Source: Mytilus trossulus
Taxonomy: Eukaryota
DNA: 64,000 bases
Assembly (NCBI RefSeq): GCF_036588685.1
Contig: NC_086379.1
Span: forward strand, 84,072,001-84,136,000
Reading direction: 5' to 3'
Shown piece by piece: positions 8,270 through 24,676 of this stretch. The notes under the pieces were generated by a model that was not told the origin of the DNA, did no database searches, and saw nothing but the letters and a program-made list of their open reading frames with translations. Position 1 is the stretch's first letter. Each line of letters opens with the position of its first letter. The position numbers and the translations under genes are program-made.

Positions 8270-9540
8270 ACATTTTCCCATATTTTGACTATTTTATTTA
8301 TTGTGTCTGTTTATGTAACGCATCAATGTAAATATAACGGAATTTGATGAGACTGTCATTAAAGTGAGAGGGTTAGCGCTATAGAACCAGGTTTAAAATT
8401 TTTTTTTTTTAAATTGTCTGTATGCACATTGAACATCAAATTTATGTGACGTATATAATTTTTCTAACGTCAGACACTCAAATCAATCCATGTGTTCTTA
8501 GACAGTAGATGTTATTGTGTCCTGTTAAATTGTTCCCTTTAAAAAGTTTTGGATTCTCATATATTCTATGTATAATTTTTGGACTAGTTTGAATCTCGGT
8601 CTATTTCTGTAATTTATTCTTACATACTTTTGATTTTTTAACCCTGTATGCGTACATTGCCTATGTAAATTTTAAAATTGTTTGTATGCACATTGAACGA
8701 CAAATTTATGTGACGTATATAATTTTTCTGACGTCGGACACTCAAGTAGATCCATGTGTTCGTGGATAGGTTTTTGTGTCCTGTTAAATTGTTCCTTTTA
8801 AAAGTTTTGGATTCTCATAAATTCTATGTATAACTTTTGGACTAGTTTGATTTCTGTAATTTATTCTTACATACTTTTGATTTTTTAACCCTGTCTGCGC
8901 TCATTGCCTATGTAAAATTTAAAATTGTTTATAATCCAGGTACTTTTGATAACTATTGTATGCACATTGAACGACAAACTTATGTGACGTATATAATTTT
9001 TCTGACGTCAGACACTCAAATCAATCCATGTGTTCGTAGATAGCAGATGTTGTTGTGTCCTGTTAAATTGTTATACGATGATGACTGATGTTCCCATATT
9101 TTGACTATTTTATTGATTGTGACTGTTTATTTAACGCATCATGTAAATGTAACGGAATTTGATGAGACTGTTATTAAAGTGAGAGGGTTAGCTCTATAGA
9201 ACCAGGTTTAATCCACCATTTTCTACATTTGAAAATGCCTGTACCAAGTCAGGAATATGACAGTTCTTGTCCATTCGTTTTTGATGCGTTTTGTTTTTTG
9301 ATTTTGCCATGTGATTATGGACTTTCCAAATTGATTTTCCTCTGAGTTCAGTATTTTTGTGATTTTACTTTTTAATCCACCATTTTCTACATTTGAAAAT
9401 GCCTGTACCAAGTCAGGTATATGACAGTTCTTGTCCATTCGTTTTTGATGCGTTTTGTTATTTGATTTTACCATGTGATTATGGACTTTCCGAATTGATT
9501 TTCCTCTAAGTTCAATATTTTTTGTGATTTTACCTTTTTC
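8270..9540. repeat. Abundant interspersed repeat with internal tandem subunits; other copies at 37432-38291, 39590-39865, 57385-57950
   Basis: Shared core gtgagagggttagcgctatagaaccaggtttaatccaccattttctacatttgaaaatgcctgtaccaagtcagg. Confidence 0.85.
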
Positions 9541-10315
9541 TATTACAAAACACATCAACCTTATTTCTTTCAATCAATAGTTGTCAAATATAATTGTCAA
9601 CACTAAACCTGTCCTTCTATTCTATCAAAGTAAATAGTTTTACTTTACTTATACAATAATATATTTTGTTAAATGATCTACCTAACTCTGCACAAAGAGA
9701 GATAACTCAAAAAATAAAATTATTCGTTTGACTTGACAAAGGACAATTAAACAAGGACAATAACTCTGTAAAAATAATCTAACCAAAATCAATATCTTCC
9801 AGCATGAAAAAATGTATGAGAAACTGATTTGTGATATAGATGGACTGACAACCAGAACATGTTGAAGTCCATTTCAGCTTAAGAGACTAATAACTAATAA
9901 AAAACTTTGATAGGCAAAAACAAATTACAAAAATACTGAACTTAGAGGAAAATCTAATCGGAAAGTCAATAATCACGTGGCAAAATCAAATAACAAAAAA
10001 CATTCATAGAGTAAATAATATATAAAAAATACACCATTTAAAACTAAAATACTGCAAAAACATGTGGTTCTGTTCAATTGGAAGCCTTTAAATCAGTAAT
10101 TGTCGCTTTTTAGTGTTTGTCATATCCTTTTTATAATTAATTTGTTATATATTGGCATTTGGTTTTCTCATTTCTCATTTTAATTTATACAACATTTTAA
10201 ATTGGTAGAAGCGTTTGTTATAGAAGAAATGTGCTGTCCATTTTGTATATAAATATATATTTTGTGTGGTCAGGTCAGTGCAATGACCTCTTTGATACTG
10301 ATTGAATAATAATAT

Positions 10316-10635
10316 TGTTGTATCTTTACCCTAAGCCCCGGGTTCTCCCTATTAGGGGTAGACAACTGATAACATTCTCCCTGCCAGGAGTAGACGATGG
10401 ACACCAATGGGCCTCTGGTTGGATACAGCGGATGTCAGAGCCTGCGCACGCCTGCAGCGCCTTCTTCACCTTATGGTCAACAATACGTTAGACGCAATAT
10501 AACGAAGACACAGTAACAACGCCCGAGTTATAGATAATTACATAATATTTAAGCCTAAGTACTTCTTATATGTATAAAGTCCAGGTCAGGTCCTTTCAAG
10601 GGAAATAGTCTTTCCCCAAGACGAACACCACATTA
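10316..10635 (+). repeat. 5' LTR (TGTTG...CATTA)
   Basis: Matches 20796-21115 with 2 mismatches (aacatt/accatt; cttctt/cctctt). Confidence 0.95.
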
Positions 10636-10636
10636 T

Positions 10637-10659
10637 TGGTAGTTGCGGGTGGTTCGAAC
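10637..10659 (+). promoter_or_regulatory. Primer binding site, resembling the complement of the initiator tRNA-Met 3' end
   Basis: TGGTAGTTGCGGGTGGTTCGAAC starts 1 nt after the LTR; imperfect match to the iMet-type PBS TGGTAGCAGAGGATGGTTTCGA. Confidence 0.7.
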
Positions 10660-11097
10660 ACACATGGTGTGACCTAGTTAGCCATTTTGGTCAGGGAATT
10701 TTGACTAGGTGCAATCAAGCGTGATTTGCAAAATAATTTTGGCTATTATGAGACTTTGCAAGTTGGATTAGGCTTAAAAGAAAAGCTTTAGAAGCGATAC
10801 CTTATTGAGCAAAGCGTTGTAAGATAAGTTATTCACTGTCTGTGAAAGTTTTCAAACTTTGTCCAAGTCATTGATTTTTTTCAGATTGAGTCTCGCGTGA
10901 TTTCGTGTTACCAGGTAACAGCGATACTTGAGATCAATACCGGAAGCGATTTCCGTGATTTGCTTACATATGCAATACACATCTTTGCTATTTGTAAACG
11001 GGATTTAAATCAATAAAGACTTGTTTATTATTTTGTTATTGTGTTGTCATTTATTTATAGTGAAAGTATCACGGAATATAGGGTAATATTCAGCACA

Positions 11098-13031
11098 ATG
11101 AGTGGGTTTAAAATTAAAATAAACTCCAGTCCGGAGTCTGTTCTCCTACATGTACCTGGCATTGGTACGGCTACTGCTCGTAGAATTATAGTAATGAGAA
11201 ATAATGGCATAACAATAACACCAGAAATATTGGCCCAAATACCATATATGAAAAATAAAATGTCACTTGTGTCCGATATGATTTATTTTTCTCCTTGTGA
11301 ATTCAATGACATGGACAATGTTGATGTCAGGTATCAAGGTCAGCCACATGAGTAACAAGACTATGAGACAGATACACATGTAAAATCACACGAGGGAGGG
11401 GCAGCAAATTTTGTTTCCACACCCTTCACCCTGGGTACTATTAGACGGGAAATTGCTCATTTGCAAGAATTTAACACCGATACACAGAGGTGGATAGACC
11501 AACACGGTTCCACACAGGCACCTGTCCAGGGGGGTGTAATTTATCAAAAACCTAATTTACATCAACCGGTTTTTTCTGACTCGGAGATTGCCATGGATAC
11601 AGTGTGGAATTCGCAGGTTGATCGCCCGTCAATGAGATCCATGCCCTCATGCATTGAGGAAAATGAATATCCAACCCAAGAGATGGATCGTTGCAGAATT
11701 TTTGACGATAATCTGTCCTGTAGTGAGGAATCGTTACTTCCCAGCCAGAAGAAATTGACCCAGCATACGGACCACATTATGTAGAATATGAACCGTCAGA
11801 TAAGCCAGATTTGCCAAGTCTAGATCGGTCTATGAGTATTCAGCATGATAGCACCACTATGATAGAGGTTCAGCTGAATCAGCAACCAAGGTTAGTGGGT
11901 GAACATTGTACAGAGTACGAGTCGTCAACTGCTATGAAAGAGCAACATTTCGAGAACACCCACCTCAACGACAGGTTCCAACAAAGTCAATCAACAATTG
12001 AACAGGACTTTAACAGACAGACTAGGGAACCAATCAATCAGCGCAGTAGGTTGTTAGAAAATTCTGTCAACTATATTCAACCGCCACAACCAACAGTTCA
12101 ACTGCCTGTTGAACATACAGTCAACTTCAACCAACGTCAACAAGCTGTTCAACTACCTGTTGAACGTATCAACCAGCGTCAACAAGCTGCAACTCCCTGT
12201 TGAACATAATGACAACTACCCGCGATCAAATACTAGAGCCATTCATCTACTTGGTGGTCACACAGTCACCAACACACAACCAATTCAACAATCAATTCAA
12301 CAATAAACCCGGCATACCATTAGCAACGTACCACATTAATCACACGGCACATCCGTGCTTAACGGACAATTGCCTACTCAACAAGGTTTCAACAGGTCAC
12401 CTCCGACTGTTGCCAACCAACCAATCAACCACAGGGCTACAGGTCAACAACCACCTCAACCCAATTTCAACAGGTCGAACCCTTTACCTGCACTTAGGTC
12501 TACTCCACCCGTCAGGGAAAGGGAACCTTATCAACAACTTCCACCGACCGCTAACAGGGCCAATCAACCACCCTGTCCCAGTTCAACAGGTCAACTACAG
12601 TCAACTAGACAACAAAACTATACCTTTCCAGTCGGTACAGCCGGACAACAAAACAGAGTGATTGATAATCAACAAGATCAACCACCGATCAACCATCCTG
12701 TTAATATATCACATATCAACAGCCATGTTCCACCGACACAACAATTTAACAGAACAGGTCTATACCAACCTAACACCAACCAGTCAGGTTTTCAACAACC
12801 ACTCAATAACACAATGGGTCAGCAGGGGCAAACGCCTCAGGCCATACATAACCAACAGGAATTTTACAGGCAACAACCGGTGCAACATCTCCAAAATGTT
12901 ACTGCACCTATACATCAGACTCAACAGCCATATGGAAATATACCATATTAGCAAGGGAGGCCCTATCCTTCAACAACACCAATCTTGTACAAGGAACGGC
13001 TCAATCAGGGTATTATGACACAGCTCCACAC
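11098..13031 (+). pseudogene. gag: Disrupted 5' part of gag: N-terminal HhH motif followed by a long Q/P/N-rich low-complexity region
   Basis: ATG at 11098 (MSGFKIKINSSPESVLLHVPGIGTATARRII). The fragments at 11041, 11461, 11811, 12109/12355 and 13032 join into one frame across in-frame stops (11353, 12304, 12949) and frameshifts (~11740, ~12190, ~12965). Confidence 0.8.
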
Positions 13032-16000
13032 TTGCCAGTGTACCCACAACAACAGTTGTACAATAACAGTCCACACACTCAGTTTCAGGATCAACGCAGT
13101 ATGTCTAGTATTACGAGCTGCTCAAATAGTGATTCAGATTCATCTAGTTCTACATCAGGGGTAGTGTATCGTCGGAGTCGTCATAAGAGTAGAAGCCACA
13201 AAACACACTCTGGACTCAGTATATCAAGCAGACATGTTTTACCAGTGGAGGAGGAGGCTAGTGAACACTCATCGCCACACCGAAAAAATTCAGGCAAGAA
13301 GCATGACAAAAAGAGGTCAGACAGACATGGTCAGTCGGAAACGGATGGTCACCATTCCTCAAGCAACCGTCATAGAGCGAAGCCAGCTCCAATGCAACAG
13401 GACAAGAAATTTTTCTTTTCGGTGCCCAAGAACCTTAAGTACACAGGGAAAGGCAACTGGAAGGCATTTTACACAAAGTTCACCGGGTACGCTGAGGCTG
13501 CTGGTTGGACGGACAAACAAAAACGAGAACAGCTTTGTTGGTGCTTGGAGGACAAAGCTAGTGATTTTTATACAGTGCTACTTGAATCCAACAAAGACAT
13601 TGCTTTTAGTGCAGTAGTGACTAAAATGGTGAAACGCTTCGGTTTTCAAGAACCACAAGAAACTTCACAGATACAGTTTCAGACTATAACCCAAAAGAAA
13701 GAGGAATCCCTGGAGGATTGGGCGGATCGTGTATTATCCCTGGCGACACAATCCTTCAAAGACCTCTCTGAAGAGTACATGACAAAACAAACAGTAATGA
13801 AATTTTGTCAAGGTTGCAACGACCCAGAGGCTGGACAACACGCATGTGGGTTTAAACCAGTATCGGTTGAAAATGCAATTGATATAATTAAGTGGTATCA
13901 GCATTCAAGAAAGGCTGTGCAAGCCCATATTGCTCAAGGAAAAACACATGAAGTCAAACAGGCGTCAGCTCCAACACCAACAGCACAAGTTAGTGACACA
14001 CCATCAGTGCACGATGTAGGCTCATCTAAACCAAACATAGACACACGAGTATCTCAAATGGAGCAACAGCTTCGTCAACAACGAGAAGAGCAACAACAGA
14101 GCATGCAACAGATGCAAAGCCTACTGTCCTCAATGGCTACACTTACAGAGGAAATGCGACATTCAAACAGATCTAGTGGTACTTCGCCCAGTCGGGACTA
14201 TAGATCAGATAATACCTCACGTGGACGTGGTCAAGGTAGAAGAGATGGTTATAATAATCGTGCTGGTAACCGCAGGTCACAAACCCCAGACGGGGCATGT
14301 TTTTATTGTCATGAAATAGGACATTTCAAAAGAGATTGCCCAAAGTTAAATAACTCACCTGGCAGCAAACCGCCAACTCAGAATAAGCAAACAGAACGCA
14401 AATCAGTTACAATGAATGTGCCAGAGGACAAAGCTACAGAGGGACCATCTAATGGGTTTACTGTGGTAGGAACAATTGGGACTGATCAACTGTTGAGAGT
14501 AAAGGTACAAATCCAGGACAAGCTAGTAACTGCATTGATTGATACGGGCTCAGAGGTTAACATAATGCAGGACAAAGTTTTTGATTCTCTGAAAGAAAAA
14601 CCTTATGTCATTAAAAAGACACTTATGCATGGAGCAGGCCGAGAAATGCAGATGACCTGCAGAATTACTAATCCTACTCTGTTTAGTATACAGGACCTAC
14701 TTTTCAATCACAACTTATATATCGCTCCAATTGACTGTGAGATGCTACTGGGCCATGACTTCTTAGCTAGTAATAATGTTATTCTCAACATTGGTCAAGG
14801 ATACATGTCCATCAACGACAAGACAGTTAAGCTAGTCTTAGGAGGAGAGATACCATCTGCTCAACCCTCAGTCAGCAGAATTACAATACCAAGCTCGGAA
14901 GTAGTCCCACCTAACTCAGTAATGCGAATGAATTGTACAGTACCAGTACAGGATAATGATTTTGTGATAGAACCAAACTCGAAGACTACACTCTTGATTC
15001 CAAGGTCCGTTTGTGCTAAAGGACAAAGTCCTGTTGTTTGTTTTATGAATGTGACGGACAACCCTGTCCGACTCCATGGTGGAACAGAAGTAGCTGAGGC
15101 ACATGCTGTGACCATAATTGAATCTATGGATGACCCTCAAGAGCTAAGTGTTGGTACTTGTTCAACCAGTAAACAGGGTACCAGTCAAAAGGGTACACCA
15201 CCTAAACAAGAGGACCTCCCAGATCATCTCCAAGAACTCTTTACTACATCCAGTCAGGATTTGACATCAGATCAGAAATCAAAACTGAGATCTTTGCTTT
15301 ACACGTACAGTGATGTTTTTGCAAGGACAGAGTTTGACCTTGGTAATTTTAGTCATGTAGAACATGAAATTGATACTGGCGATGCCAGGCCTATTCAGCT
15401 CCGTATGCGGAGAACACCAGCTTGTTTTGTTCAAGAGGAGGAGGCGCACCTCCAGAAAATGTTAGATGCCGGAGTTATACAACCTTCAACATCAGAATGG
15501 GCTTCAGCACCAGTGCTTATAAGGAAGAAAGATGGCGGGGTACGCTGGTGCATTGATTTCCGGAGGCTAAACTCAGTCACATCACGTGATTTATTTCTTC
15601 TGCCCCTGATAGACGAATGTCTGGATACTTTGGCTGGACACATATGGTATTCCAAACTGGACGCTAATAGCGCATATTGGCAAATAAAGATCAAGCCAGA
15701 GGACCGTAAGAAAACTGCATTTGTCACCAAATATGGATTGTTTGAGTGCGTCAAGATGGCATTTGGACTTTGCAACGCACCAGGTACCTATGCCAGAGTA
15801 ATGAACCTGGTACTCAGAGGTTTAACGTGGAAAACTGTTTTGGCTTTCCTTGATGATATATTGGTTCTACGACCATCTTTTGATGAACATCTCACTAACC
15901 TACAGAATGTATTTGCCAGATTTAGAGAGTATGGACTTAGACTAAAGCCTAAGAATTGTGCTTTATTCAGAACCAATGTGGAACTTTTAGGCAGGAGTGT

Positions 16001-18672
16001 CAGTAACCAGGGCCTCCAAATAGGTCAGCAACATTTGCAACCAGTTAGTGGTTGGGTTGTGCCTACTAGCACAATGGAAGTTGAACAATTCCTGGGATTT
16101 GTGAACTACTACCGTTCATTTATCAAGGACTATGCCAAAATATCTGCTCCACTATATGAAGTGACAGGAAAAAAATTGTTTTCATGGAACCATGAACGTC
16201 AACTTGCATTTCAGACGTTAAAAGACAACTTGTTATCTGCACCAGTACTTACTTTGCATAACAACAAGGATTATTTCACCCTGGATACAGACGCCTCCCA
16301 AAATGCAATAGGCGCAGAACTCATTCAGGTGCAAGATGGAGAGGAACGGACCATAGTATATGGTAGCTTTGTACTATGGGCCGAACAAAAACGTTATTGC
16401 ACAACTAGGAAGGAGTTGTTGGCAGTAATTAGATTTACTAGACAGTTCAGACACTACCTTCTGGGAAGACAATTCACTGTGAGGACAGACCATAGTAGTT
16501 TGACATGGCTTGTCAATTTCAAAGAGCCCCAGGGGCAATTAGTTAGATGGTTGGAAGAGCTCAGCCAATATGACCTGGTCATAAAGCATAGGCCTGGTAA
16601 ACAACACATTGCTGCAGATGTCTTGTCTCGTCTCCCGGATAGGTTAAAAGAATGTCCACATTATACTACAGACACCATACCGGCAAGTTTACCTTGCAAG
16701 GGCTGTAATTACTGCCAGCGAGCACATCAAAGTTGGGCACAGATCTTATGTGATGTAGATGAAGCAGTACCACTGGCTAGAAAAAGAAAGCAAAAGCCAA
16801 GATTACTTAAAAGAGTAGCAACAGCAATGATGATGTTATTTGAAACTCCAGAACAGGTTTCAACCTTGGAACAACCTGCAGTACCAGTTGAATCTGCAGT
16901 TACTGACGACTGTTGTTACACTAGCAGCTTAAACTTAATTGAGCCACTAGCAAGCCAGTCATCTGAGGAATGTGATTTACCACCATTCAGTACAAGTATA
17001 GAATTGATTTTTACTCCATCAACGGTAAGAATTGTAATGGATGACTCTTCTGATTGTGTCGTAGCAGCAATCGCACAAGAAGAGGGCATAACCATCTCAG
17101 GTTTCAGTGAAGAGGATATAAAAACAGGCCAAGAGAGTGATCTAGACTTGATGTTTATCCTCCCGTATTTAAAAGATGGCTGTGAACCACTATCCAATGA
17201 TTTGTTCCTGGCACCACCAGCAGCCAAGAGTCACTGGATAAATAAAGAAAGATTTTTCTTAGACAATGGTATTTTAAAGAGTCAACCCAAAACAGAGGGA
17301 GCCAATACAAGACTTGTTGTACTCGCTTCTTTAAGACAAACAGTAATGGAGCTCTGTCATGAACTGCCTAGTGCAGGACATCAAGGTGTATCAAGGACCA
17401 TGTCCAAGATAAAGGACAAATATCACTGGTATAACATGACCAAAGACATTAACTTGTTTGTACTTAGTTGTGATACTTGCAACAAGAACAAGAAAGCGAG
17501 CAGACATAGTAAATGTCCTCTGACCAAGTACCATGCTGGGTACCCTATGGAAAGAGTCCACATAGATTTTATGGGCCCTTTGCCAAAGACGAAACAAAAC
17601 AATGAACATATTTTAATGATGACAGACCAATTCACCAAGTGGACGGAATGTATACCACTACCGTCACAAACGGCGGAAGTAACTGCTCAGGCTGCCATTA
17701 ATGAGTTTTTTTTACAAGATTTGGCTATCCATTCCAGCTATTCTCAGATCAGGGACGTAACTTTGAGAGCGCACTCCTTAAAGCAGTATGTGATTTGCTG
17801 CAAATTCATAAGGCGAGAACGACCCCATATCGTCCTCAGTCAAATGGACAGGTTGAGAGACAGAACCGCAGTCTCATGGATGCAGTCAGATGCTTTGTTG
17901 ATTCACAACAAGAAAGCTGGGATCAACATATTGCTCAACTAGGGGGAGCCATGAGATCTAGTGTCAACAGGAGTACAGGGTATATACCAAACAAGCTAAT
18001 GCTGGGCAGGGGAACCAATCAGCCAGCAGACCTTATGTTCGGCAGTCAGAGCGAAAGGAAGTATGAGGGTGCTGATAGCTATATAATAGACCTTGAAAAA
18101 GCTATTAAAAGTGCGCATACCATTGCTCGGGATAAGCTCAAGACTTCCCAGGAGAGAATGAAGAGAGACTATGACCTAAGGGTCTTAGAAAAATCGTACC
18201 AGCCGGGGGATCTTGTGTATGTTTTAGACACTGCCCAAATTAAGGGTAAATGTAAAAAATTAGGGTCACCATGGAAAGGGCAAGGCATTGTAATTAGTAA
18301 GGTTACCGGTACGTGTACAAGGTGAAACTCCAACGGGTGATTTTTAACACTAATCATGACCGACTCAAGCCATGTGGGGATAGGAAGATTCCTGCTTGGT
18401 TGGAGACGTGTAGGGACAAATTTAAACAAGGTATTGATGTCTTGGCAGGCAATAAGACCAAGCCTACAACCCCTCAGTACTGTGTGTGTCGGGGCCCAGA
18501 CACGGGTGAGACAATGGTCCAATGTGATTATTGTAGGGAATGGTTCCATTTAACCTGCATAGGTATGTCAATCCAAGAGGCCAATGAGATAGATCTCTAC
18601 ATTTGCCCAAACTGCCAACTTGTCCGTCCTACTCCACCCTCAAAAGATAAAAAAGGGGGAGAAAATGAGTAG
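13032..18672 (+). pseudogene. pol: Gag-Pol polyprotein: capsid-like region, CCHC knuckle, aspartic protease, RT, RNase H, integrase, PHD finger; two frameshifts in the integrase region
   Basis: CFYCHEIGHFKRDC (14298-14339); LIDTGS (~14541); RWCIDFRRLN and FLDD (~15846); DTDAS and RTDH; integrase H-x6-H...CDTC, HIDFMGP, then SDQGRNFES and YRPQSNGQVER after a frameshift in a T8 run (17706-17713); second frameshift at ~18310; stop TAG at 18670-18672. Confidence 0.95.
18478..18615 (+). other. PHD finger (C4HC3) at the integrase C-terminus
   Basis: YCVCRGPDTGETMVQCDYCREWFHLTCIGMSIQEANEIDLYICPNC has all 8 zinc ligands at canonical spacing. Confidence 0.93.
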
Positions 18673-18772
18673 GTAACCATATTGTGTAAATAGTCAGTTT
18701 AATTATTGTGTATTAGATACGTAAATTGTCAGTTTAACTAATGTTTGTTTATTTTTTTTCATATTTTTCAGA

Positions 18773-19693
18773 ATGTCAGACTCAGAATCATTCAGGTCTT
18801 GCTCCAGCGAGGGCAGTGAAGATGAGGAAAGGTCTTGGAGGCCAAGTAGTTGTAACTCCCAGCCGGGAGTGGGCATTCAGCCATTTGATACCACAATCTT
18901 GGATGAAGCCAACCACAGGAGAAGGGTCAGGAGGGAAGTACCTGGCCAGGAAGGACCTGTAGAGGATCCCACAGTACTGCCGGAGGTACCAGCAATACCC
19001 CAAGTAAGTGAGTTAAAGGAACAGGAGGAATCTGTACAGGAACCTGGAGAGTCACTTCCTACTCCAAAGGAGCCTGCAGCCGCTCAGGAGGAAGCAGTCA
19101 AGGAAGTCGACCTTATGGCTTTCAAGAAGGTCATTCCAGAGGCTTGGAAGGGGAAGAAGCACCTGGTATGGACAGGACCATACAGTGGGTTCAAGGAAAG
19201 AACCTGGAGACTGAGTGACAGGGATGTCGCGTGCCCTGTCCCAGACTGTCCGGTGATAACCAGGCACTTGAGAGAACATGCCCTAGCTGACCACTTGTCA
19301 GGGATGTTCGGCAGTAAGTTCTCCCAACAGATCTTGCAGGACAGAGAGTTCCAGCATTTCAGAGGCCAGATGGTCATTCTCATTGCCAGATGGTTGACGG
19401 GGAGAGAGGATGTTACAGCCTCTGAGTTTGTATCATGGCTCCAGCGACGAGCCGGCATCCCAGACGGAGTTAGGATTCAGGGAATTGATATGCCCCCGCT
19501 CCGGGCTGTCTGTTCTGCTATGAAATGGCCACAGCGCAGGGTGTATACGATCCACCCATTTAATAGTCCAGTGGTTGTGCTGTATTGGAGGGTGATGTTG
19601 TCCCTTATTAGACATCTCAGCATGGCAAACAGAATAACCATTGCCATGGACGAATACACCGGGAACAACGGTCCCACTTATGACCTAGTCTAA
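18773..19693 (+). CDS. Retrotransposon ORF3, unknown soluble protein (acidic N-terminus, CPVPDC...HLREHALADH zinc-finger-like motif)
   Basis: 306-aa GC-rich ORF inside the element, directly after a branch point, polypyrimidine tract and CAG acceptor (18738-18771). No evident signal peptide or transmembrane helix. Confidence 0.75.
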   Translation: MSDSESFRSCSSEGSEDEERSWRPSSCNSQPGVGIQPFDTTILDEANHRRRVRREVPGQEGPVEDPTVLPEVPAIPQVSELKEQEESVQEPGESLPTPKEPAAAQEEAVKEVDLMAFKKVIPEAWKGKKHLVWTGPYSGFKERTWRLSDRDVACPVPDCPVITRHLREHALADHLSGMFGSKFSQQILQDREFQHFRGQMVILIARWLTGREDVTASEFVSWLQRRAGIPDGVRIQGIDMPPLRAVCSAMKWPQRRVYTIHPFNSPVVVLYWRVMLSLIRHLSMANRITIAMDEYTGNNGPTYDLV

Positions 19694-19696
19694 CAG

Positions 19697-20113
19697 ATGA
19701 ACTGGAAGTTCATGGCAGCTAAAGTTGTGGCAGAGCCCGCCGTGGCTAAGTCCACAACCAGAGTGCCAGCGACAGAGACAAGCTGTAGCTCTAGCTCTGT
19801 GGATGTCCCACAAGTGACACAGCCATTGCAGTCAGTGCCCCAGAGGGAGGAGGAAGAGATGGTCACTCCACCAGTGGAGGAGCCAGTAGCCGTGGCAACC
19901 AAGCCAGAGGAATCATTGGTGGTTCTAGTGTACCACAACACTAGGAAGTTGGTTGGGGTAACATCTGTTGCTAGTGCTGTTGCTCAGGCTAGGGAGGTGT
20001 TTGACCTGGAAGACCAGGAGGTCGTGCTCACCTACCTGGGAGCGGAGCTGACCAGCTCAGTAAGGATGGAGTTGTTGCCAGCCATGGCAGAACTGACAGT
20101 AACACGCAAATGA
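19697..20113 (+). CDS. Retrotransposon ORF4 or C-terminal continuation of ORF3; last ~65 aa resemble a ubiquitin-like (CIDE-N/PB1-type) beta-grasp domain
   Basis: Same frame as ORF3, separated only by TAA-CAG; motif RKLVGVTSVASAVAQAREVFDL...VVLTYLGAEL...LLPAMAELTV. Confidence 0.6.
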   Translation: MNWKFMAAKVVAEPAVAKSTTRVPATETSCSSSSVDVPQVTQPLQSVPQREEEEMVTPPVEEPVAVATKPEESLVVLVYHNTRKLVGVTSVASAVAQAREVFDLEDQEVVLTYLGAELTSSVRMELLPAMAELTVTRK

Positions 20114-20782
20114 GCCATATATGAGATACGTGGATGATATTCTGGACTCTTTTTGGTTTTGGCTTAGCCTCCGCTTCCTGTCTGGAAGCTGTACTCCCCA
20201 GGATTTGAAAACCAGGCCAGTGTATAAATTGTAAAATAGTAGATTAGTGTTGGACATTTTTACATATCGCCATATTGAAGAACGGTATTGGTGTATACAT
20301 TGTTTTTTATGGTCATGGTTTTCACTTTTTGTTCCATGCTGGAACGGGTGCTTAGTAGATTTAGTAGAATAGCAGGTAGTTTAGATTAATTTGAAATTCA
20401 AGGGTAGCTTAATGAACTGACAGAAATAGAGATCTTTGTAAATTTTTGATTATTTGTAGTAGATTTAGTTTTTGTGTATTTTAGAGATATGTGATTCAGA
20501 ATTAGGACAATTCTAAATCGTAGCTCCGAGTAACTGACATGGATTTTTTTTTTTTATTGTCTTAGGCAAATAGTTCAGTGATTTATTTTTTAAATGTCAT
20601 GTTTTAAGGGAAAAGATAAAATTTCAATAGAGACCCAATAGCCAGGGAACAGGGGGGGGGGGGGTGGATTTTAGAAATAACCCATTCGTTGGTTAGGTAA
20701 TTAACTTAGTATTTTGAATTAAAGGCATAAGGGGCGTCTTCAGTTGTCAGGCCTTTGTCAGAACTTATAGTTCCTCCTTTTT

Positions 20783-20795
20783 AGGAAGGAGGGGG
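20783..20795 (+). promoter_or_regulatory. Polypurine tract
   Basis: AGGAAGGAGGGGG abuts the 3' LTR. Confidence 0.9.
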
Positions 20796-21115
20796 TGTTG
20801 TATCTTTACCCTAAGCCCCGGGTTCTCCCTATTAGGGGTAGACAACTGATACCATTCTCCCTGCCAGGAGTAGACGATGGACACCAATGGGCCTCTGGTT
20901 GGATACAGCGGATGTCAGAGCCTGCGCACGCCTGCAGCGCCCTCTTCACCTTATGGTCAACAATACGTTAGACGCAATATAACGAAGACACAGTAACAAC
21001 GCCCGAGTTATAGATAATTACATAATATTTAAGCCTAAGTACTTCTTATATGTATAAAGTCCAGGTCAGGTCCTTTCAAGGGAAATAGTCTTTCCCCAAG
21101 ACGAACACCACATTA
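20796..21115 (+). repeat. 3' LTR
   Basis: Direct repeat of 10316-10635. Confidence 0.95.
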
Positions 21116-21892
21116 ATATGTATACTGCTCTCAGCTCCCTACATGTAATTTCTATTGTGTATGTAATTCAGGTTTATCATCTAATTGTAACAAGACATGT
21201 TGTATCAACAGGTTAATTTTATAAACAAAAATTTACTCACCATAACTTTGAAATAAAACCTTTTTGGAAATCAAAAATCATTAAATAATACATTTTTTTA
21301 TGATTGAACTACTGTAACACATCTCTTTAACAAATCGCACGTGGTAAATGATCACATGACCAGAATTTAAATGTAATTGAAATTAACATAACAAAAGACT
21401 TGATGTACGGTAACTATGATACTTCTTAATAAATACAGGTAGCTTTTGTGAGAAATAAATAAAGATACAAAACATACTTTATTTAAAAAAATATATGGGG
21501 AGAGGTAAAGATATATAGATCGATAATGATTGCAGGTACATGTACATTTGTACAAGGACAGATAATATTTTTAAAGGTTGATGTTAATAATTTATAGTGG
21601 GGTGTTTTTTTTTCTCATTTGATTTTTCCCCGACAAATGAGACTGTAACAATTGGGGCCCCCTTAGTTGCTCCCCTGGGCAACTGAGGGTTGATGTAACA
21701 GGCGATTGTTAATAAAATATGTTTTATATAAAAAAAAAAAAAGAAGAAATGTGCATGTACTATTTGGGGGAAAATAAAAACAAAATAAGGTAAGTACATG
21801 TATATACAAATCGCAAGAAATATTCTATTTGCATACCAAATTTTGATAAACAGTAGTTGAAAGTGAAATAACAAGACAAAAAAAACTTAAAA

Positions 21893-22130
21893 AAAAATCA
21901 AAATGAATAGTCCATTAAACCATGGCAAAATTAAAAATCAAAATGAATAGTCCATTAAACCATGGCAAAATTAAAAATCAAAATGAATAGTCCATTAAAC
22001 CATGGCAAAATGAATAGTCCATTAAACCATGGCAAAATGAATAGTCCATTAAACCATGGCAAAATGAATAGTCCATTAAACCATGGCAAAATGAATAGTC
22101 CATTAAACCATGGCAAAATTAAAAATCAAA
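21893..22130. repeat. Short tandem array of 27/39-bp units (AAAATGAATAGTCCATTAAACCATGGC)
   Basis: 7 copies of the core. Confidence 0.9.
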
Positions 22131-23267
22131 AGCATCAAACGAACTATAAAAAACGATTTGTTTGTAGAAGCTTTCTCACTGGAAACACAATGGTGTTACT
22201 AATCTGGTGACATACATTTTCTTATTCTAAGTTTATGTGTCAATTATTACTCATGCCAAGTATTTCTTTATTTAAAACAAGAATAAGTTAACGGACACGC
22301 AACGGATATGAACGGAAGTCTAACGGATAAGAACGGACGTCCAACGGACATGAACGGATTGAAAAAAAGTTATCCGTTAGACGTCCGTTCGAGCTATCCG
22401 GTAAGGTGTGACCGAGGCTTAACGCAAACTCCAAAAATAAATAGATGAATGATGGATGTATGAAATACCGAGATACGTCTCATAGCTATGCAAATTCAAA
22501 CTCGGTATAACAGTGATTTTCGGGAATAGGTCACGTTGTGTACTTAACAGACATACAACATATATGTTCAACCACAAGGTAAGACATGGTAAACATTAGT
22601 TTAGACACAAACACATCGTATAAATCAACTAATTCGTGATCGTCAGAATTACGAGATAATTTATACTCTGAAACATTCGTGCCACGGATGTAATGTTTCA
22701 CGCACCTCTGTCGTTTACAAAGAGACATTTCTATATCGTATTGCTATCTTTTATATCTAAACAGGTCATTTTGATAAAAATTTACATTAGCACTTGTCTT
22801 CACAAATCATAACGTCAAACTGTTCAATTTGTTTCCGTGTGACCTTTTTTTGTTTTTAAGATTTGAAAAATGCGAGTCCTTTAAAAAGAGGAAAATCATC
22901 CCAGCAAGAAAGAATCAAATTAAGTGTTTAGTTCATTTTTAATTGTTTAAAACATGAACTTTTAACCAAGGTACTAAGTTTTTATTTTAATTAGGCTAAC
23001 CAAATGGAAGGTTTTCGAGAATCAATGGTAATCATGGGCATGTTCTTTTAAAGTTTTTTTCATATCTGAATTCCGATCAGGTCTTTATTTGCGTTAACGA
23101 TACTTGGCGTAATCTGAACGAAACAGAGCATTATGAGTTGCACGAATGTCTTTCACAAAAATTTATTCTTGTGGATCTGGTTTCAAATTTATTCTTTTGC
23201 TAGTTAGTCTTAGAGTAATATCGTCCTGAACATGCATGAAATAATTCCACTGGACGTTAAACAAACA

Positions 23268-24281
23268 TCAATCAATCAACCTTAAGGTAGTGTAACAATC
23301 AATCAACCTTAAGGTAGTGTAACAATCAATCGACCTTAAGGTAGTGTAACAATCAATCGACCTTAAGGTAGTGTAACAATCAATCGACCTTAAGGTAGTG
23401 TAACAATCAATCGACCTTAAGGTAGTGTAACAATCAATCGACCTTAAGGTAGTGTAACAATCAATTGACCTTAAGGTAGTGTAACAATCAATCGACCTTA
23501 AGGTAGTGTAACAATCAATTGACCTTAAGGTAGTGTAACAATCAATCAACCTTAAGGTAGTGTAACAATCAATCGACCTTAAGGTAGTGTAACAATCAAT
23601 CGACCTTAAGGTAGTGTAACAATCAATCGACCTTAAGGTAGTGTAACAATCAATCGACCTTAAGGTAGTGTAACAATCAATCGACCTTAAGGTAGTGTAA
23701 CAATCAATCAACCTTAAGGTAGTGTAACAATCAATCGACCTTAAGGTAGTGTAACAATCAATCAACCTGAAGGTAGTGTAACAATCAATCAACCTTAAGG
23801 TAGTGTAACAATCAATCGACCTTAAGGTAGTGTAACAATCAATCAACCTTAAGGTAGACCTTAAGGTAGTGTAACAATCAATCAACCTGAAGGTAGTGTA
23901 ACAATCAATCGACCTTAAGGTAGTGTAACAATCAATCAACCTTAAGGTAGTGTAACAATCAATCAACCTTAAGGTAGTGTAACAATCACTCAACCTTAAG
24001 GTAGTGTAACAATCAATCGACCTTAAGGTAGTGTAACAATCAATCGACCTTAAGGTAGTGTAACAATCAATCGACCTTAAGGTAGTGTAACAATCAATCG
24101 ACCTTAAGGTAGTGTAACAATCAATCGACCTTAAGGTAGTGTAACAATCAATCGACCTTAAGGTAGTGTAACAATCAATCGACCTTAAGGTAGTGTAACA
24201 ATCAATCGACCTTAAGGTAGTGTAACAATCAATCGACCTTAAGGTAGTGTAACAATCAATCGACCTTAAGGTAGTGTAACA
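23268..24281. repeat. 27-bp minisatellite, ~37 copies (AATCAATCGACCTTAAGGTAGTGTAAC)
   Basis: Direct inspection; nearly homogeneous units. Confidence 0.97.
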
Positions 24282-24676
24282 TTAGTTAGGTTAATTGAAA
24301 GCCATTAAAATGAGCTGTTTTAGATTAATCTACTCTTAGGAGAGTTTTCCGCAGCACTGTCTTATCTGATTTCACAATTAATGAGTATTTGATTCTGCTG
24401 CTCTGAGAGAGAGTTAAATCACTTTGGTACAGACCTCGTTGATTTTATTTGGTTTTGTTTGGGGCAGGCTTGTTTATGAAATTTGTGTGGGATACCGATT
24501 CATGTTTTTGTCATTGTGTCCGTATATCTTAATGATGACGTCTTGAGAATATAGTGTTTCCTTGATTATTCAATTAAGTTAAAATTCGTGATTTGTTTTG
24601 AATATGATCTTTTAGATGACATATGTATACAATGGACTAAATTTTGCATGGAGCAGATGTGGTAAGACATACTTAC

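What the first reader, a model, noticed from the sequence alone, without database searches (positions are those of the whole stretch)
18313..18672. Gypsy integrase ends in a PHD finger: a candidate chromatin-reading retrotransposon with PHD in place of a chromodomain
Seen: after the integrase core and a degenerate GPY/F-like region (SPWKGQG), Pol continues across a 1-nt frameshift at ~18310 into a complete C4HC3 PHD finger. The Tyr before Cys1, the Met of MVQCD and the Trp of EWFH are all present. Established: these residues form the aromatic cage of H3K4me3-reading PHDs (BPTF, ING, PHF2/8, CXXC1 type), and chromoviruses carry a chromodomain at this position to steer integration. Inference: this lineage may target H3K4me3 chromatin using a captured host reader. 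PHDs are known from some other transposons (Ginger, some LINE ORF1s), so novelty needs checking.
Basis: partly seen in the sequence, partly recalled or inferred. Interest (0 to 1): 0.88.

Follow-up and report, generated by a model that had tools for sequence, protein, structure and literature searches.

The report
Gypsy retrotransposon integrase ending in PHD
A recently active Ty3/Gypsy retrotransposon in a mollusc genome carries, at the end of its integrase where chromoviruses carry a chromodomain, a conserved PHD finger of the type that reads the active-promoter mark H3K4me3; the fusion is real and widespread, but its effect on where the element inserts is untested.

Summary
Window 18478-18615 encodes a complete C4HC3 PHD finger (Pfam PF00628, E 1e-11), directly downstream of the integrase GPY/F module. 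It lies inside a 10.8 kb LTR retrotransposon (10316-21115; LTRs 99.4% identical, 4-bp ATAT duplication).

The window copy is broken by two private frameshifts: +TT at 17706-17707 and one G missing after 18307. It also has a private Pro-to-Gln change in the GPY/F motif. Four of eight same-family copies, three more diverged families in this genome, and contigs of independent runs keep RNaseH-IN-PHD in one frame.

At least 94 protein clusters from bivalves, gastropods and a sea urchin share the architecture. On an integrase tree they form essentially one clade. The PHD is under purifying selection (dN/dS about 0.15). The cage Tyr/Phe, Met and Trp are as conserved as the zinc ligands. The nearest sequences and structures are all H3K4me3 readers (PHF2/PHF8/KDM7A, CFP1/Spp1, BPTF, DIDO).

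H3K4me3-guided integration remains an inference. Flanks of 24 loci show no CpG-rich signal, and copies cluster on one chromosome. PHD-retrotransposon fusions are already catalogued (Grau-Bove 2022), so this is a new member of a known kind. Two other first-stage notes flagged the same fusion elsewhere in this genome.

The parts
10312..10315 (+). Target-site duplication ATAT, left copy
   Evidence: Same 4 bases at 21116-21119. Five other insertions of the family also show matching 4-bp duplications.
10316..10635 (+). 5' LTR (320 bp, TG...TTA)
   Evidence: 99.4% identical to 20796-21115.
10637..10659 (+). Primer-binding-site-like stretch starting TGG, two bases after the LTR
   Evidence: Read and conserved after every 5' LTR of the family. 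The primer tRNA was not identified.
13032..17942 (+). Gag-Pol open frame: gag (PNMA/Retrotrans_gag-like, CCHC knuckle), protease, RT, RNase H, integrase H2C2 finger and start of the integrase core
   Evidence: Pfam hits.
17706..17707 (+). Private 2-nt insertion (TT) that breaks the integrase core frame in this copy
   Evidence: Absent from 6 of the 7 other copies; the seventh has only one of the two T's. Absent from contigs of runs X1, X15 and X16 (table 4).
17795..18325 (+). Rest of the integrase core and the start of the C-terminal SH3-like GPY/F module, in the second frame
   Evidence: rve_3 hit. Continuous with the upstream frame in other copies.
18266..18375 (+). GPY/F module (WKGPG...NHDRLKPC in intact copies). 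The window copy has Pro-to-Gln at 18281-18283 and a missing G after 18307.
   Evidence: The model shows an SH3-like beta domain with pLDDT 86-91.
18376..18477 (+). Linker: a conserved DRxxPxW helix followed by about 20 poorly conserved residues
   Evidence: Alignments A1 and A2. Helix at model residues 361-371, then a low-confidence stretch at 380-388.
18478..18615 (+). PHD finger from the cage Tyr to Cys8 (C-x-C-x11-C-x2-C-x4-H-x2-C-x15-C-x2-C)
   Evidence: PF00628 E 1.1e-11. PDB neighbours PHF2/PHF8 at E 2e-16. Model core pLDDT 86-95, and the 35 matches at E<=0.001 are all PHD fingers, most solved with an H3K4me3 or H3K4me2 peptide.
18670..18672 (+). Pol stop codon, 18 residues after the last PHD cysteine
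   Evidence: In homologues a median of 4 residues follows the last Cys.
18773..20113 (+). Accessory ORF3 (18773-19693) and ORF4 (19697-20113) in the env position. They are part of the element but not of the PHD finding.
   Evidence: No Pfam family. ORF3 is conserved downstream of pol in families A, B and C. RNA-library contigs cover this part.
20783..20795 (+). Polypurine tract
   Evidence: Purine run directly before the 3' LTR in all copies.
20796..21115 (+). 3' LTR
21116..21119 (+). Target-site duplication ATAT, right copy

Best explanation
This is a dead copy of a recently active Ty3/Gypsy LTR retrotransposon family in a mollusc genome. Its Pol polyprotein ends integrase core, then SH3-like GPY/F domain, then a short helix and flexible linker, then a PHD finger.

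The PHD is a conserved, functional module of a large clade of marine-invertebrate Gypsy elements. It is of the CFP1/Spp1 - PHF2/PHF8 - BPTF - DIDO type.

The most likely mechanism is this. The PHD binds the N-terminal tail of histone H3 carrying K4me3. This tethers the integrase-cDNA complex to nucleosomes of active, promoter-proximal chromatin. It would be the euchromatic counterpart of the chromodomain tether of chromoviruses.

Shown here: the architecture, the in-frame fusion, the single clade on the integrase tree, purifying selection, the fold and the conserved cage residues.

Inferred: binding to H3K4me3 (about 0.7) and steering of integration (about 0.45).
For: Element anatomy: LTRs, 4-bp TSD, PPT, PBS-like site, and the domain order gag-PR-RT-RH-IN.

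In-frame fusion:
- 4 of 8 same-family copies are open over 837-856 aa; three run to the locus edge and the fourth stops 58 nt short of it.
- Family B (71% nt identity) is open in 3 of 6 copies.
- A 69% relative and family C (64%) are also open.
- RNaseH, H2C2, rve and PHD all score above the Pfam cut-offs in three families.
- Independent sequencing runs carry the in-frame state.

Spread: 94 of the 120 listed homologue clusters have the PHD at the very C-terminus. They include Mytilus, Pinctada, Pecten, Nucella and Lytechinus. About 60 of the top 150 clusters at 50% identity match GPY/F plus PHD in one stretch.

One clade: a 103-row integrase clade (SH-aLRT 96) holds 93 PHD-bearing rows, 6 with remnants and 4 without.

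Selection: dN/dS is 0.155 between families A and B and 0.145 between the 69% relative and family C. The other pairs are saturated at synonymous sites.

Cage residues over 90 clusters: Tyr/Phe 86, Met 89, Trp 90.

Nearest solved proteins: PHF2/PHF8/KDM7A at E about 1e-16 for family A, and CFP1 without gaps for family C. All 35 Foldseek matches at E<=0.001 are PHD fingers, most of them solved with an H3K4me3 or H3K4me2 peptide, with rmsd mostly 0.9-2.3 A over about 50 residues.

Cage rules come from PMC3241642. An engineered ING2 PHD fused to the LEDGF integrase-binding domain redirects HIV-1 integration to transcription start sites (PMC8149907).

Three full-length copies have identical LTR pairs, which indicates recent activity.
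Against: - No binding or integration data exist for this element.
- Flanks of family-A insertions (28 sides) have GC 0.324 and CpG o/e 0.69, against 0.315 and 0.77 in window background (Mann-Whitney p 0.12). That gives no promoter or CpG-island signal. The test is weak: small n, background from one region, and old copies filtered by selection.
- The window copy sits between tandem repeats in AT-rich DNA with no long ORFs nearby.
- 10 of 24 loci lie on one chromosome at 46-87 Mb. This looks like accumulation in a TE-tolerant region.
- The fourth cage position is Asp in this family, not aromatic.
- In clear RNA libraries, contigs cover ORF3/ORF4 only and not pol.
Confidence: 0.55

Rival explanations
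1. The PHD does bind methylated H3K4 but does not choose the insertion site. It might instead keep Pol or the pre-integration complex on chromatin (nuclear retention, mitotic tethering). It might also favour expression or escape from silencing after integration.
For: The homology, conservation and fold evidence is the same as for the main reading. Retained copies show no promoter-like flanks and cluster in one chromosomal region.
Against: The position at the integrase C-terminus matches the chromodomain of chromoviruses. That chromodomain does direct integration (Gao 2008, cited in PMC6673714). Engineered PHD tethers also retarget integration.
Confidence: 0.2
2. The PHD reads another ligand: H3K4me0, H3K4me2, or a non-histone peptide that mimics the H3 tail, as PHF2 does with VRK1. 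It would then tether the integrase to a different partner.
For: The top structural match is PHF2 bound to a VRK1 peptide (7m10). The fourth cage wall is Asp in this family and varies (Asp 48, Trp 23, Tyr 12) across the clade.
Against: The invariant Trp, the aromatic residue before Cys1 and the Met are the H3K4me3 signature. There is no acidic cluster before Cys1 as in H3K4me0 readers (PMC3241642). CFP1 and Spp1, which have the same loop length, bind H3K4me3 (9c0o and 6j2p titles).
Confidence: 0.15
3. The PHD is a passenger. It could be a decaying host exon read through by chance, a gene-model artefact, or part of a domesticated integrase gene (NYNRIN-like) rather than of a mobile element.
For: The window copy is frameshifted just before the PHD. 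Database names such as 'COMPASS component SPP1' and 'NYNRIN-like' suggest host genes.
Against: The frameshifts are private to this copy. The fusion is in frame in four diverged families. dN/dS is about 0.15. The element has LTRs, a TSD and multiple copies, three of them with identical LTRs. The database names are automatic.
Confidence: 0.03

Closest known systems
Chromoviruses (chromodomain-bearing Ty3/Gypsy elements such as MAGGY and Tf1)
   Same: Both are LTR retrotransposons whose integrase carries a histone-methyl-lysine reader directly after the GPY/F module, at the very C-terminus of Pol.
   Different: Pfam finds no chromodomain. The expected target is active chromatin rather than heterochromatin. 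RT-clade membership was not tested.
Retrotransposon-PHD fusions catalogued by Grau-Bove et al. 2022 (cnidarian elements with PYGO1/2-like PHD)
   Same: RT or integrase and a PHD reader lie in one gene model. The PHD is of a kind that recognises methylated H3K4. The authors propose chromatin-guided insertion or evasion of silencing.
   Different: The PHD subtype differs (CFP1/Spp1 - PHF2/8 - BPTF type rather than PYGO type), and so do the hosts (molluscs and an echinoderm). Here the position after GPY/F, the single clade and purifying selection are documented. The text of that paper does not mention molluscs, CXXC1, PHF2 or PHF8.
PHD fingers in other transposons: CR1-like LINEs (Kapitonov and Jurka 2003), Ginger1-9_HM transposase, Chlamydomonas REM1 and Chlamys PLEs, Rehavkus
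   Same: Each is a PHD finger carried by a mobile element as an accessory domain.
   Different: These are other element classes with other positions in the protein. In Ginger1 the PHD accompanies a Ulp1 protease domain. None is an integrase-C-terminal PHD of a Gypsy element.
RAG2 PHD finger and RAG-like transposons
   Same: A PHD that binds H3K4me3 couples a DDE-type recombinase of transposon origin to active chromatin (PMC3241642 table). RAG-like transposons occur in molluscs (PMC7204232).
   Different: There the PHD is on a separate subunit (RAG2), the element is a cut-and-paste DNA transposon, and there is no reverse transcription.
Engineered LEDGF IBD - ING2 PHD fusion
   Same: An H3K4me3-reading PHD tethered to a retroviral integrase redirects integration toward TSSs and active genes (PMC8149907). 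This is the proposed mechanism in artificial form.
   Different: It is artificial and indirect, acting through a host cofactor. Here the PHD is covalently part of the integrase and evolved naturally.
CopiaMBD elements of arthropods (de Mendoza 2019)
   Same: A host-type epigenetic reader domain was captured by an LTR retrotransposon, and a role in insertion-site choice was proposed.

Membership tests
Ty3/Gypsy (Metaviridae) LTR retrotransposon | Direct long terminal repeats flanked by a short target-site duplication | tested here: met
   320-bp LTRs 99.4% identical, with ATAT on both sides. Matching 4-bp TSDs at five further insertions.
Ty3/Gypsy (Metaviridae) LTR retrotransposon | Pol domain order protease - RT - RNase H - integrase | tested here: met
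   Pfam positions along the 1636-aa ORF and in intact copies.
Ty3/Gypsy (Metaviridae) LTR retrotransposon | PBS complementary to a host tRNA 3' end, and a PPT before the 3' LTR | tested here: inconclusive
   The PPT is present. A TGG-initiated PBS-like stretch is conserved. No matching tRNA gene was found with a 21-mer allowing 1 mismatch.
Ty3/Gypsy (Metaviridae) LTR retrotransposon | GPY/F module at the integrase C-terminus | tested here: met
   WKGPG...NHDRLK is present in all in-frame copies and homologues. It is mutated (GQG) and frameshifted in the window copy.
Chromovirus | Chromodomain after the GPY/F module | tested here: not met
   No PF00385 hit in the window Pol or in three intact families. 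A PHD occupies that place.
Chromovirus | RT groups within the chromovirus clade | not tested
PHD finger (PF00628) | C4HC3 zinc ligands with canonical spacing and a score above the Pfam gathering cut-off | tested here: met
   All 8 ligands are present. Scores are 45 bits against 24 for the window and 34.7-42.2 bits in three families.
PHD finger (PF00628) | PHD fold | tested here: met
   AlphaFold2 core pLDDT 86-95. Foldseek rmsd mostly 0.9-2.3 A to solved PHDs.
H3K4me3-reading PHD subclass (BPTF, PHF2/8, CFP1/Spp1, DIDO) | Invariant cage Trp two residues before the zinc-ligand His | tested here: met
   Trp77 in the window. 90 of 90 clusters carry it. The rule is from PMC3241642.
H3K4me3-reading PHD subclass (BPTF, PHF2/8, CFP1/Spp1, DIDO) | Further cage walls: an aromatic residue before Cys1 and Met or an aromatic residue three residues before Cys3 | tested here: met
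   Tyr56 and Met68 in the window. Tyr/Phe in 86 of 90 and Met in 89 of 90 clusters. These align with the cage positions of PHF2/PHF8.
H3K4me3-reading PHD subclass (BPTF, PHF2/8, CFP1/Spp1, DIDO) | Fourth cage wall (aromatic in BPTF and PHF8) | tested here: inconclusive
   Asp63 in this family, within a loop one residue shorter than in PHF8, as in CFP1. Across the clade this position is Asp 48, Trp 23, Tyr 12.
H3K4me3-reading PHD subclass (BPTF, PHF2/8, CFP1/Spp1, DIDO) | Measured preference for H3K4me3 peptide | not testable with these tools
   This needs peptide binding assays. The complex prediction with the unmodified H3 tail gave no verdict.
TE - chromatin-reader fusions (Grau-Bove 2022) | TE catalytic domain and reader domain in one uninterrupted coding sequence | tested here: met
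   rve and PHD lie in one open frame in three families and in 94 database clusters.

The most novel reading that the evidence does not exclude
A large, old clade of marine-invertebrate Ty3/Gypsy elements uses a PHD finger fused to the integrase to read H3K4me3 directly and insert next to active promoters. That would make it the first natural integrase steered by a directly read H3K4me3 mark, a euchromatic mirror image of chromoviruses. PHD-less sister lineages carry a different basic C-terminal tether.
Probability: 0.4. Interest if true: 0.72.

Novelty: new member of a known kind. Interest (0 to 1): 0.5.

Why it matters
Where a retroelement lands decides both its own fate and its damage to the host. 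Chromodomain tethering to heterochromatin is the only well-studied case of an LTR-retrotransposon integrase that reads a histone mark by itself.

A natural integrase-PHD fusion of the H3K4me3 class would be the opposite strategy. It is close to what gene-therapy engineers built artificially with LEDGF-PHD fusions.

This family has copies with identical LTRs in a chromosome-level mollusc assembly. Sister lineages without the PHD also exist. The idea is therefore directly testable, by peptide binding and by comparing polymorphic insertions with H3K4me3 maps.

The fusion as such is not new to the literature, which limits the surprise.

Tried and rejected
- **Family consensus.** Individual copies were compared instead.
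- **Complex prediction.** PHD plus two zinc ions plus residues 2-40 of this genome's own H3 gave no verdict: score 0.30 against a mark of 0.34, and controls were not run. This is not evidence either way.
- **Random genomic controls.** Only the window's own distal sequence served as background, so the flank test is weak.
- **Primer tRNA.** A 21-mer search found only the elements' own PBS copies.
- **Cluster look-ups for taxonomy.** These returned almost no names.
- **Literature.** Searches for a described animal Gypsy integrase-PHD lineage found none. The mollusc LTR survey PMC6238403 shows zero occurrences of 'PHD finger'. Subscription journals and Repbase are not covered.
- **tRNA-gene targeting.** I considered this and dropped it; there is no tRNA in the window.
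- **RT clade.** It was not determined because no reference set was available.
Full report
**1. The observation**

Window 18313-18672 is an open frame of 119 codons. Residues 57-101 carry all eight ligands of a C4HC3 PHD finger, with spacing C-x-C-x11-C-x2-C-x4-H-x2-C-x15-C-x2-C. Pfam PF00628 scores 45 bits against a cut-off of 24, E 1.1e-11. The Tyr before Cys1, the Met three residues before Cys3 and the Trp two residues before the His are all present.

**2. What surrounds it**

The finger lies inside a 10.8 kb LTR retrotransposon at 10316-21115.
- The LTRs are 320 bp and differ at 2 positions.
- The element is flanked by a 4-bp duplication, ATAT.
- A TGG-initiated PBS-like stretch follows the 5' LTR, and a polypurine tract precedes the 3' LTR.
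- One long frame, 13032-17942, encodes a PNMA/Retrotrans_gag-like Gag with a CCHC knuckle, then protease, RT, RNase H, the integrase H2C2 finger and the start of the integrase core.
- Pol then continues in a second frame (17795-18325) and a third (18313-18672).
- After the Pol stop (18670-18672) come two unannotated ORFs (18773-19693 and 19697-20113).
- No chromodomain is found anywhere.

The host genome is 1.3 Gb with about 32% GC. Sequencing runs that hold the stretch are labelled mollusc or food metagenome. The best named protein hits are from Mytilus. A mytilid mussel is my inference, not a tool result.

**3. Are the frameshifts real, and is the fusion in frame elsewhere?**

A search of the whole genome found seven other copies of the family at 93-98% identity, plus more distant families. 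Aligned to them, the window copy has two private changes of length:
- Two extra T at 17706-17707. Six of the seven other copies lack both, and the seventh has only one.
- One G missing after 18307. All seven other copies have it.

Contigs from three independent runs (X1, X15, X16) also lack the TT and carry the G (table 4). Other copies read WKGPG.

In-frame copies:
- Four of the eight same-family copies keep a single open frame of 837-856 codons from RNase H through the PHD. Three of these frames run to the edge of the fetched locus; the fourth begins 58 nt inside it.
- So do three of six copies of a family at 71% nucleotide identity.
- So do a 69% relative and copies of a family at 64%.
- In three of these families RNaseH, Integrase_H2C2, rve and PHD all score above the Pfam cut-offs within one polypeptide.

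The integrase-PHD fusion is therefore the normal state. The window copy is a mutated one.

**4. Is the PHD maintained?**

Between families the finger shows dN/dS of 0.155 (A against B) and 0.145 (the 69% relative against C). The other pairs are saturated at synonymous sites, with dN of 0.12-0.58.

A search of 5.8 billion protein clusters with the integrase C-terminal region gave 135 hits. Of the 120 listed, 94 carry an intact C4HC3 pattern, and 90 of those have exactly the same spacing. A median of 4 residues follows the last Cys. Named sources are Mytilus galloprovincialis, Pinctada imbricata, Pecten maximus, Nucella lapillus and the sea urchin Lytechinus pictus. There are also host contigs mis-binned in bivalve-symbiont MAGs.

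An exhaustive HMMER search of 1.84 billion representatives found about 60 clusters at 50% identity, among the top 150, that match GPY/F, linker and PHD in one stretch.

Over the 90 clusters the cage positions are as conserved as the zinc ligands:
- Tyr or Phe before Cys1: 86 of 90
- Met: 89 of 90
- Trp: 90 of 90
- The position after the conserved Pro: Asp 48, Trp 23, Tyr 12

An integrase-only tree of 114 rows, with the PHD columns excluded, puts 93 PHD-bearing rows, 6 with truncated remnants and 4 without a PHD into one clade (SH-aLRT 96). Of those four, two are truncated proteins and two have a repeat tail instead. Nine PHD-less relatives and one long-branch PHD row fall outside. This fits one old acquisition with sporadic loss. 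The tree is rooted at the midpoint only, so the direction of change is an inference.

**5. What kind of PHD?**

By sequence, the window family's finger is closest to PHF2, PHF8 and KDM7A (E about 1e-16, roughly 50% identity). CFP1/Spp1, DIDO1 and BPTF follow. Family C is closest to CFP1, aligned without gaps, then to BPTF, PPS, Spp1 and PHF2.

The loop between Cys2 and Cys3 has 11 residues, as in CFP1. That is one fewer than in PHF8 and BPTF. The second aromatic wall of those cages is replaced here by Asp.

A model of the finger with a 32-row alignment has a core pLDDT of 86-95. All 35 Foldseek matches at E<=0.001 in the PDB are PHD fingers, and most were solved with an H3K4me3 or H3K4me2 peptide. 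The rmsd is mostly 0.9-2.3 A over about 50 residues.

The model of the whole integrase shows an SH3-like domain (pLDDT 86-91), a short conserved helix, a low-confidence linker and then the PHD.

[quoted passage not shown] H3K4me0 readers lack the cage and have an acidic cluster before Cys1. This finger fits the first description. A single donor gene cannot be named from 45 residues.

**6. Mechanism**

The best-supported reading is that the PHD tethers the integrase-cDNA complex to H3K4me3-marked nucleosomes. Three analogies support it:
- Chromoviral chromodomains direct integration to H3K9-methylated chromatin (cited).
- The RAG2 PHD couples a transposon-derived recombinase to H3K4me3.
- An ING2 PHD fused to the LEDGF integrase-binding domain redirects HIV-1 integration to TSSs.

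This step is inference. The only test I could run does not support it, and it is a weak test:
- The 28 host-side flanks of family-A LTRs have GC 0.324 and CpG o/e 0.69, against 0.315 and 0.77 in distal parts of the window (p 0.12).
- The window copy sits between tandem repeats in AT-rich DNA.
- 10 of 24 loci lie on contig C5 between 46 and 87 Mb (P about 5e-5 or less).

The flank test has few sites, background from one region, and a crude proxy for H3K4me3. Fixed copies are also what selection has left behind. A complex prediction with the unmodified H3 tail gave no verdict.

**7. Activity**

Three of the eight full-length copies have identical LTR pairs. The others are 97.1-99.7% identical. 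Target duplications are 4 bp and differ between sites. The family was therefore mobile very recently. I describe this only and single out no copy.

**8. What is known**

PHD fingers have been reported in several element classes:
- CR1 LINEs
- One Ginger1 family
- Chlamydomonas REM1
- Chlamys PLEs
- Rehavkus transposons

Grau-Bove et al. 2022 catalogued 823 gene models that fuse TE and chromatin domains. Most involve PHD or Chromo domains, and some involve reverse transcriptases and integrases. They also describe cnidarian retrotransposons with PYGO-like PHDs. Molluscs, CXXC1, PHF2 and PHF8 are not mentioned in that text.

The dedicated survey of mollusc LTR retrotransposons (PMC6238403) shows no occurrence of the term 'PHD finger'. 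I found no paper describing this clade or testing any TE-borne PHD for targeting. The library lacks subscription journals and Repbase.

**9. Verdict**

- Observation: confirmed.
- Architecture and conservation: firmly established.
- H3K4me3 reading: likely.
- Integration targeting: open.
- Novelty: a new, large and well-delimited member of the known class of reader-domain-bearing retrotransposons.

Two other first-stage notes (s1-823709, s1-824015) flagged the same fusion on other pieces of this genome.

Noticed in passing
window 18773-19693; L003, L006, L007, L010, L014-L020, L025-L028: ORF3, in the env position with no Pfam family, is conserved downstream of pol in all PHD-bearing families of this genome (27-38% aa identity between families). 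Within family A it is strikingly variable: 47-57% identity in four copies whose pol is 95-98% identical. This suggests modular exchange or fast evolution.
   Followed up: partly
window 18770-20198: Contigs from a clear RNA library (X17) cover only ORF3/ORF4, not pol. One contig of X16 starts at 18770, at the AG of the predicted acceptor, preceded by 25 letters that resemble the LTR around 10510-10530. This could be a subgenomic or rearranged RNA. No joint spanning the proposed 103-nt intron (18661-18780) was seen.
   Followed up: partly
G000 contig C5, 46-87 Mb: 10 of 24 family-A LTR-bearing loci, and many related pol hits, lie in this part of one chromosome (binomial P about 5e-5 or less). 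It may be a TE-tolerant or low-recombination region, or a site of local duplication. L011 and L012 are 7 kb apart.
   Followed up: partly
P0111, P0113-P0115, P0117, P0119 (PHD-less relatives): The PHD-less sister lineage keeps the DRxxPxW helix after GPY/F but ends in acidic or low-complexity tails with a short basic motif near the C-terminus (roughly GR-x-[IV]-[RK]-x-P-x-[RK]-[FL]). This could be a different chromatin tether.
   Followed up: no
G000 family-A copies (L031-L052): Three of eight full-length copies have 100% identical LTR pairs, which indicates very recent transposition in this lineage.
   Followed up: yes
window 21872-24300 and 8300-9520: The insertion is bracketed by tandem repeats: a 27-bp unit in at least 37 registers downstream, and repeats of about 264-274 bp and 164 bp upstream.
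   Followed up: no
G000 C9:27.63-28.21 Mb and C6:33.65-34.09 Mb (L061-L064): There are two large tandem arrays of histone repeats with a period of about 5.6 kb. Together they hold at least 150 identical-scoring H3 genes.
   Followed up: no
window 11811-13018: Upstream of the long Gag-Pol frame lie overlapping Gln/Asn/Pro-rich ORFs in three frames. This is possibly a frameshifted low-complexity N-terminal Gag extension.
   Followed up: no
one search runs X1-X16: About half of the sampled 31-mers of 17600-20200 are held by DNA runs under at least five organism labels, plus mollusc and food metagenomes. Near-identical copies therefore occur in several samples or related taxa.
   Followed up: no
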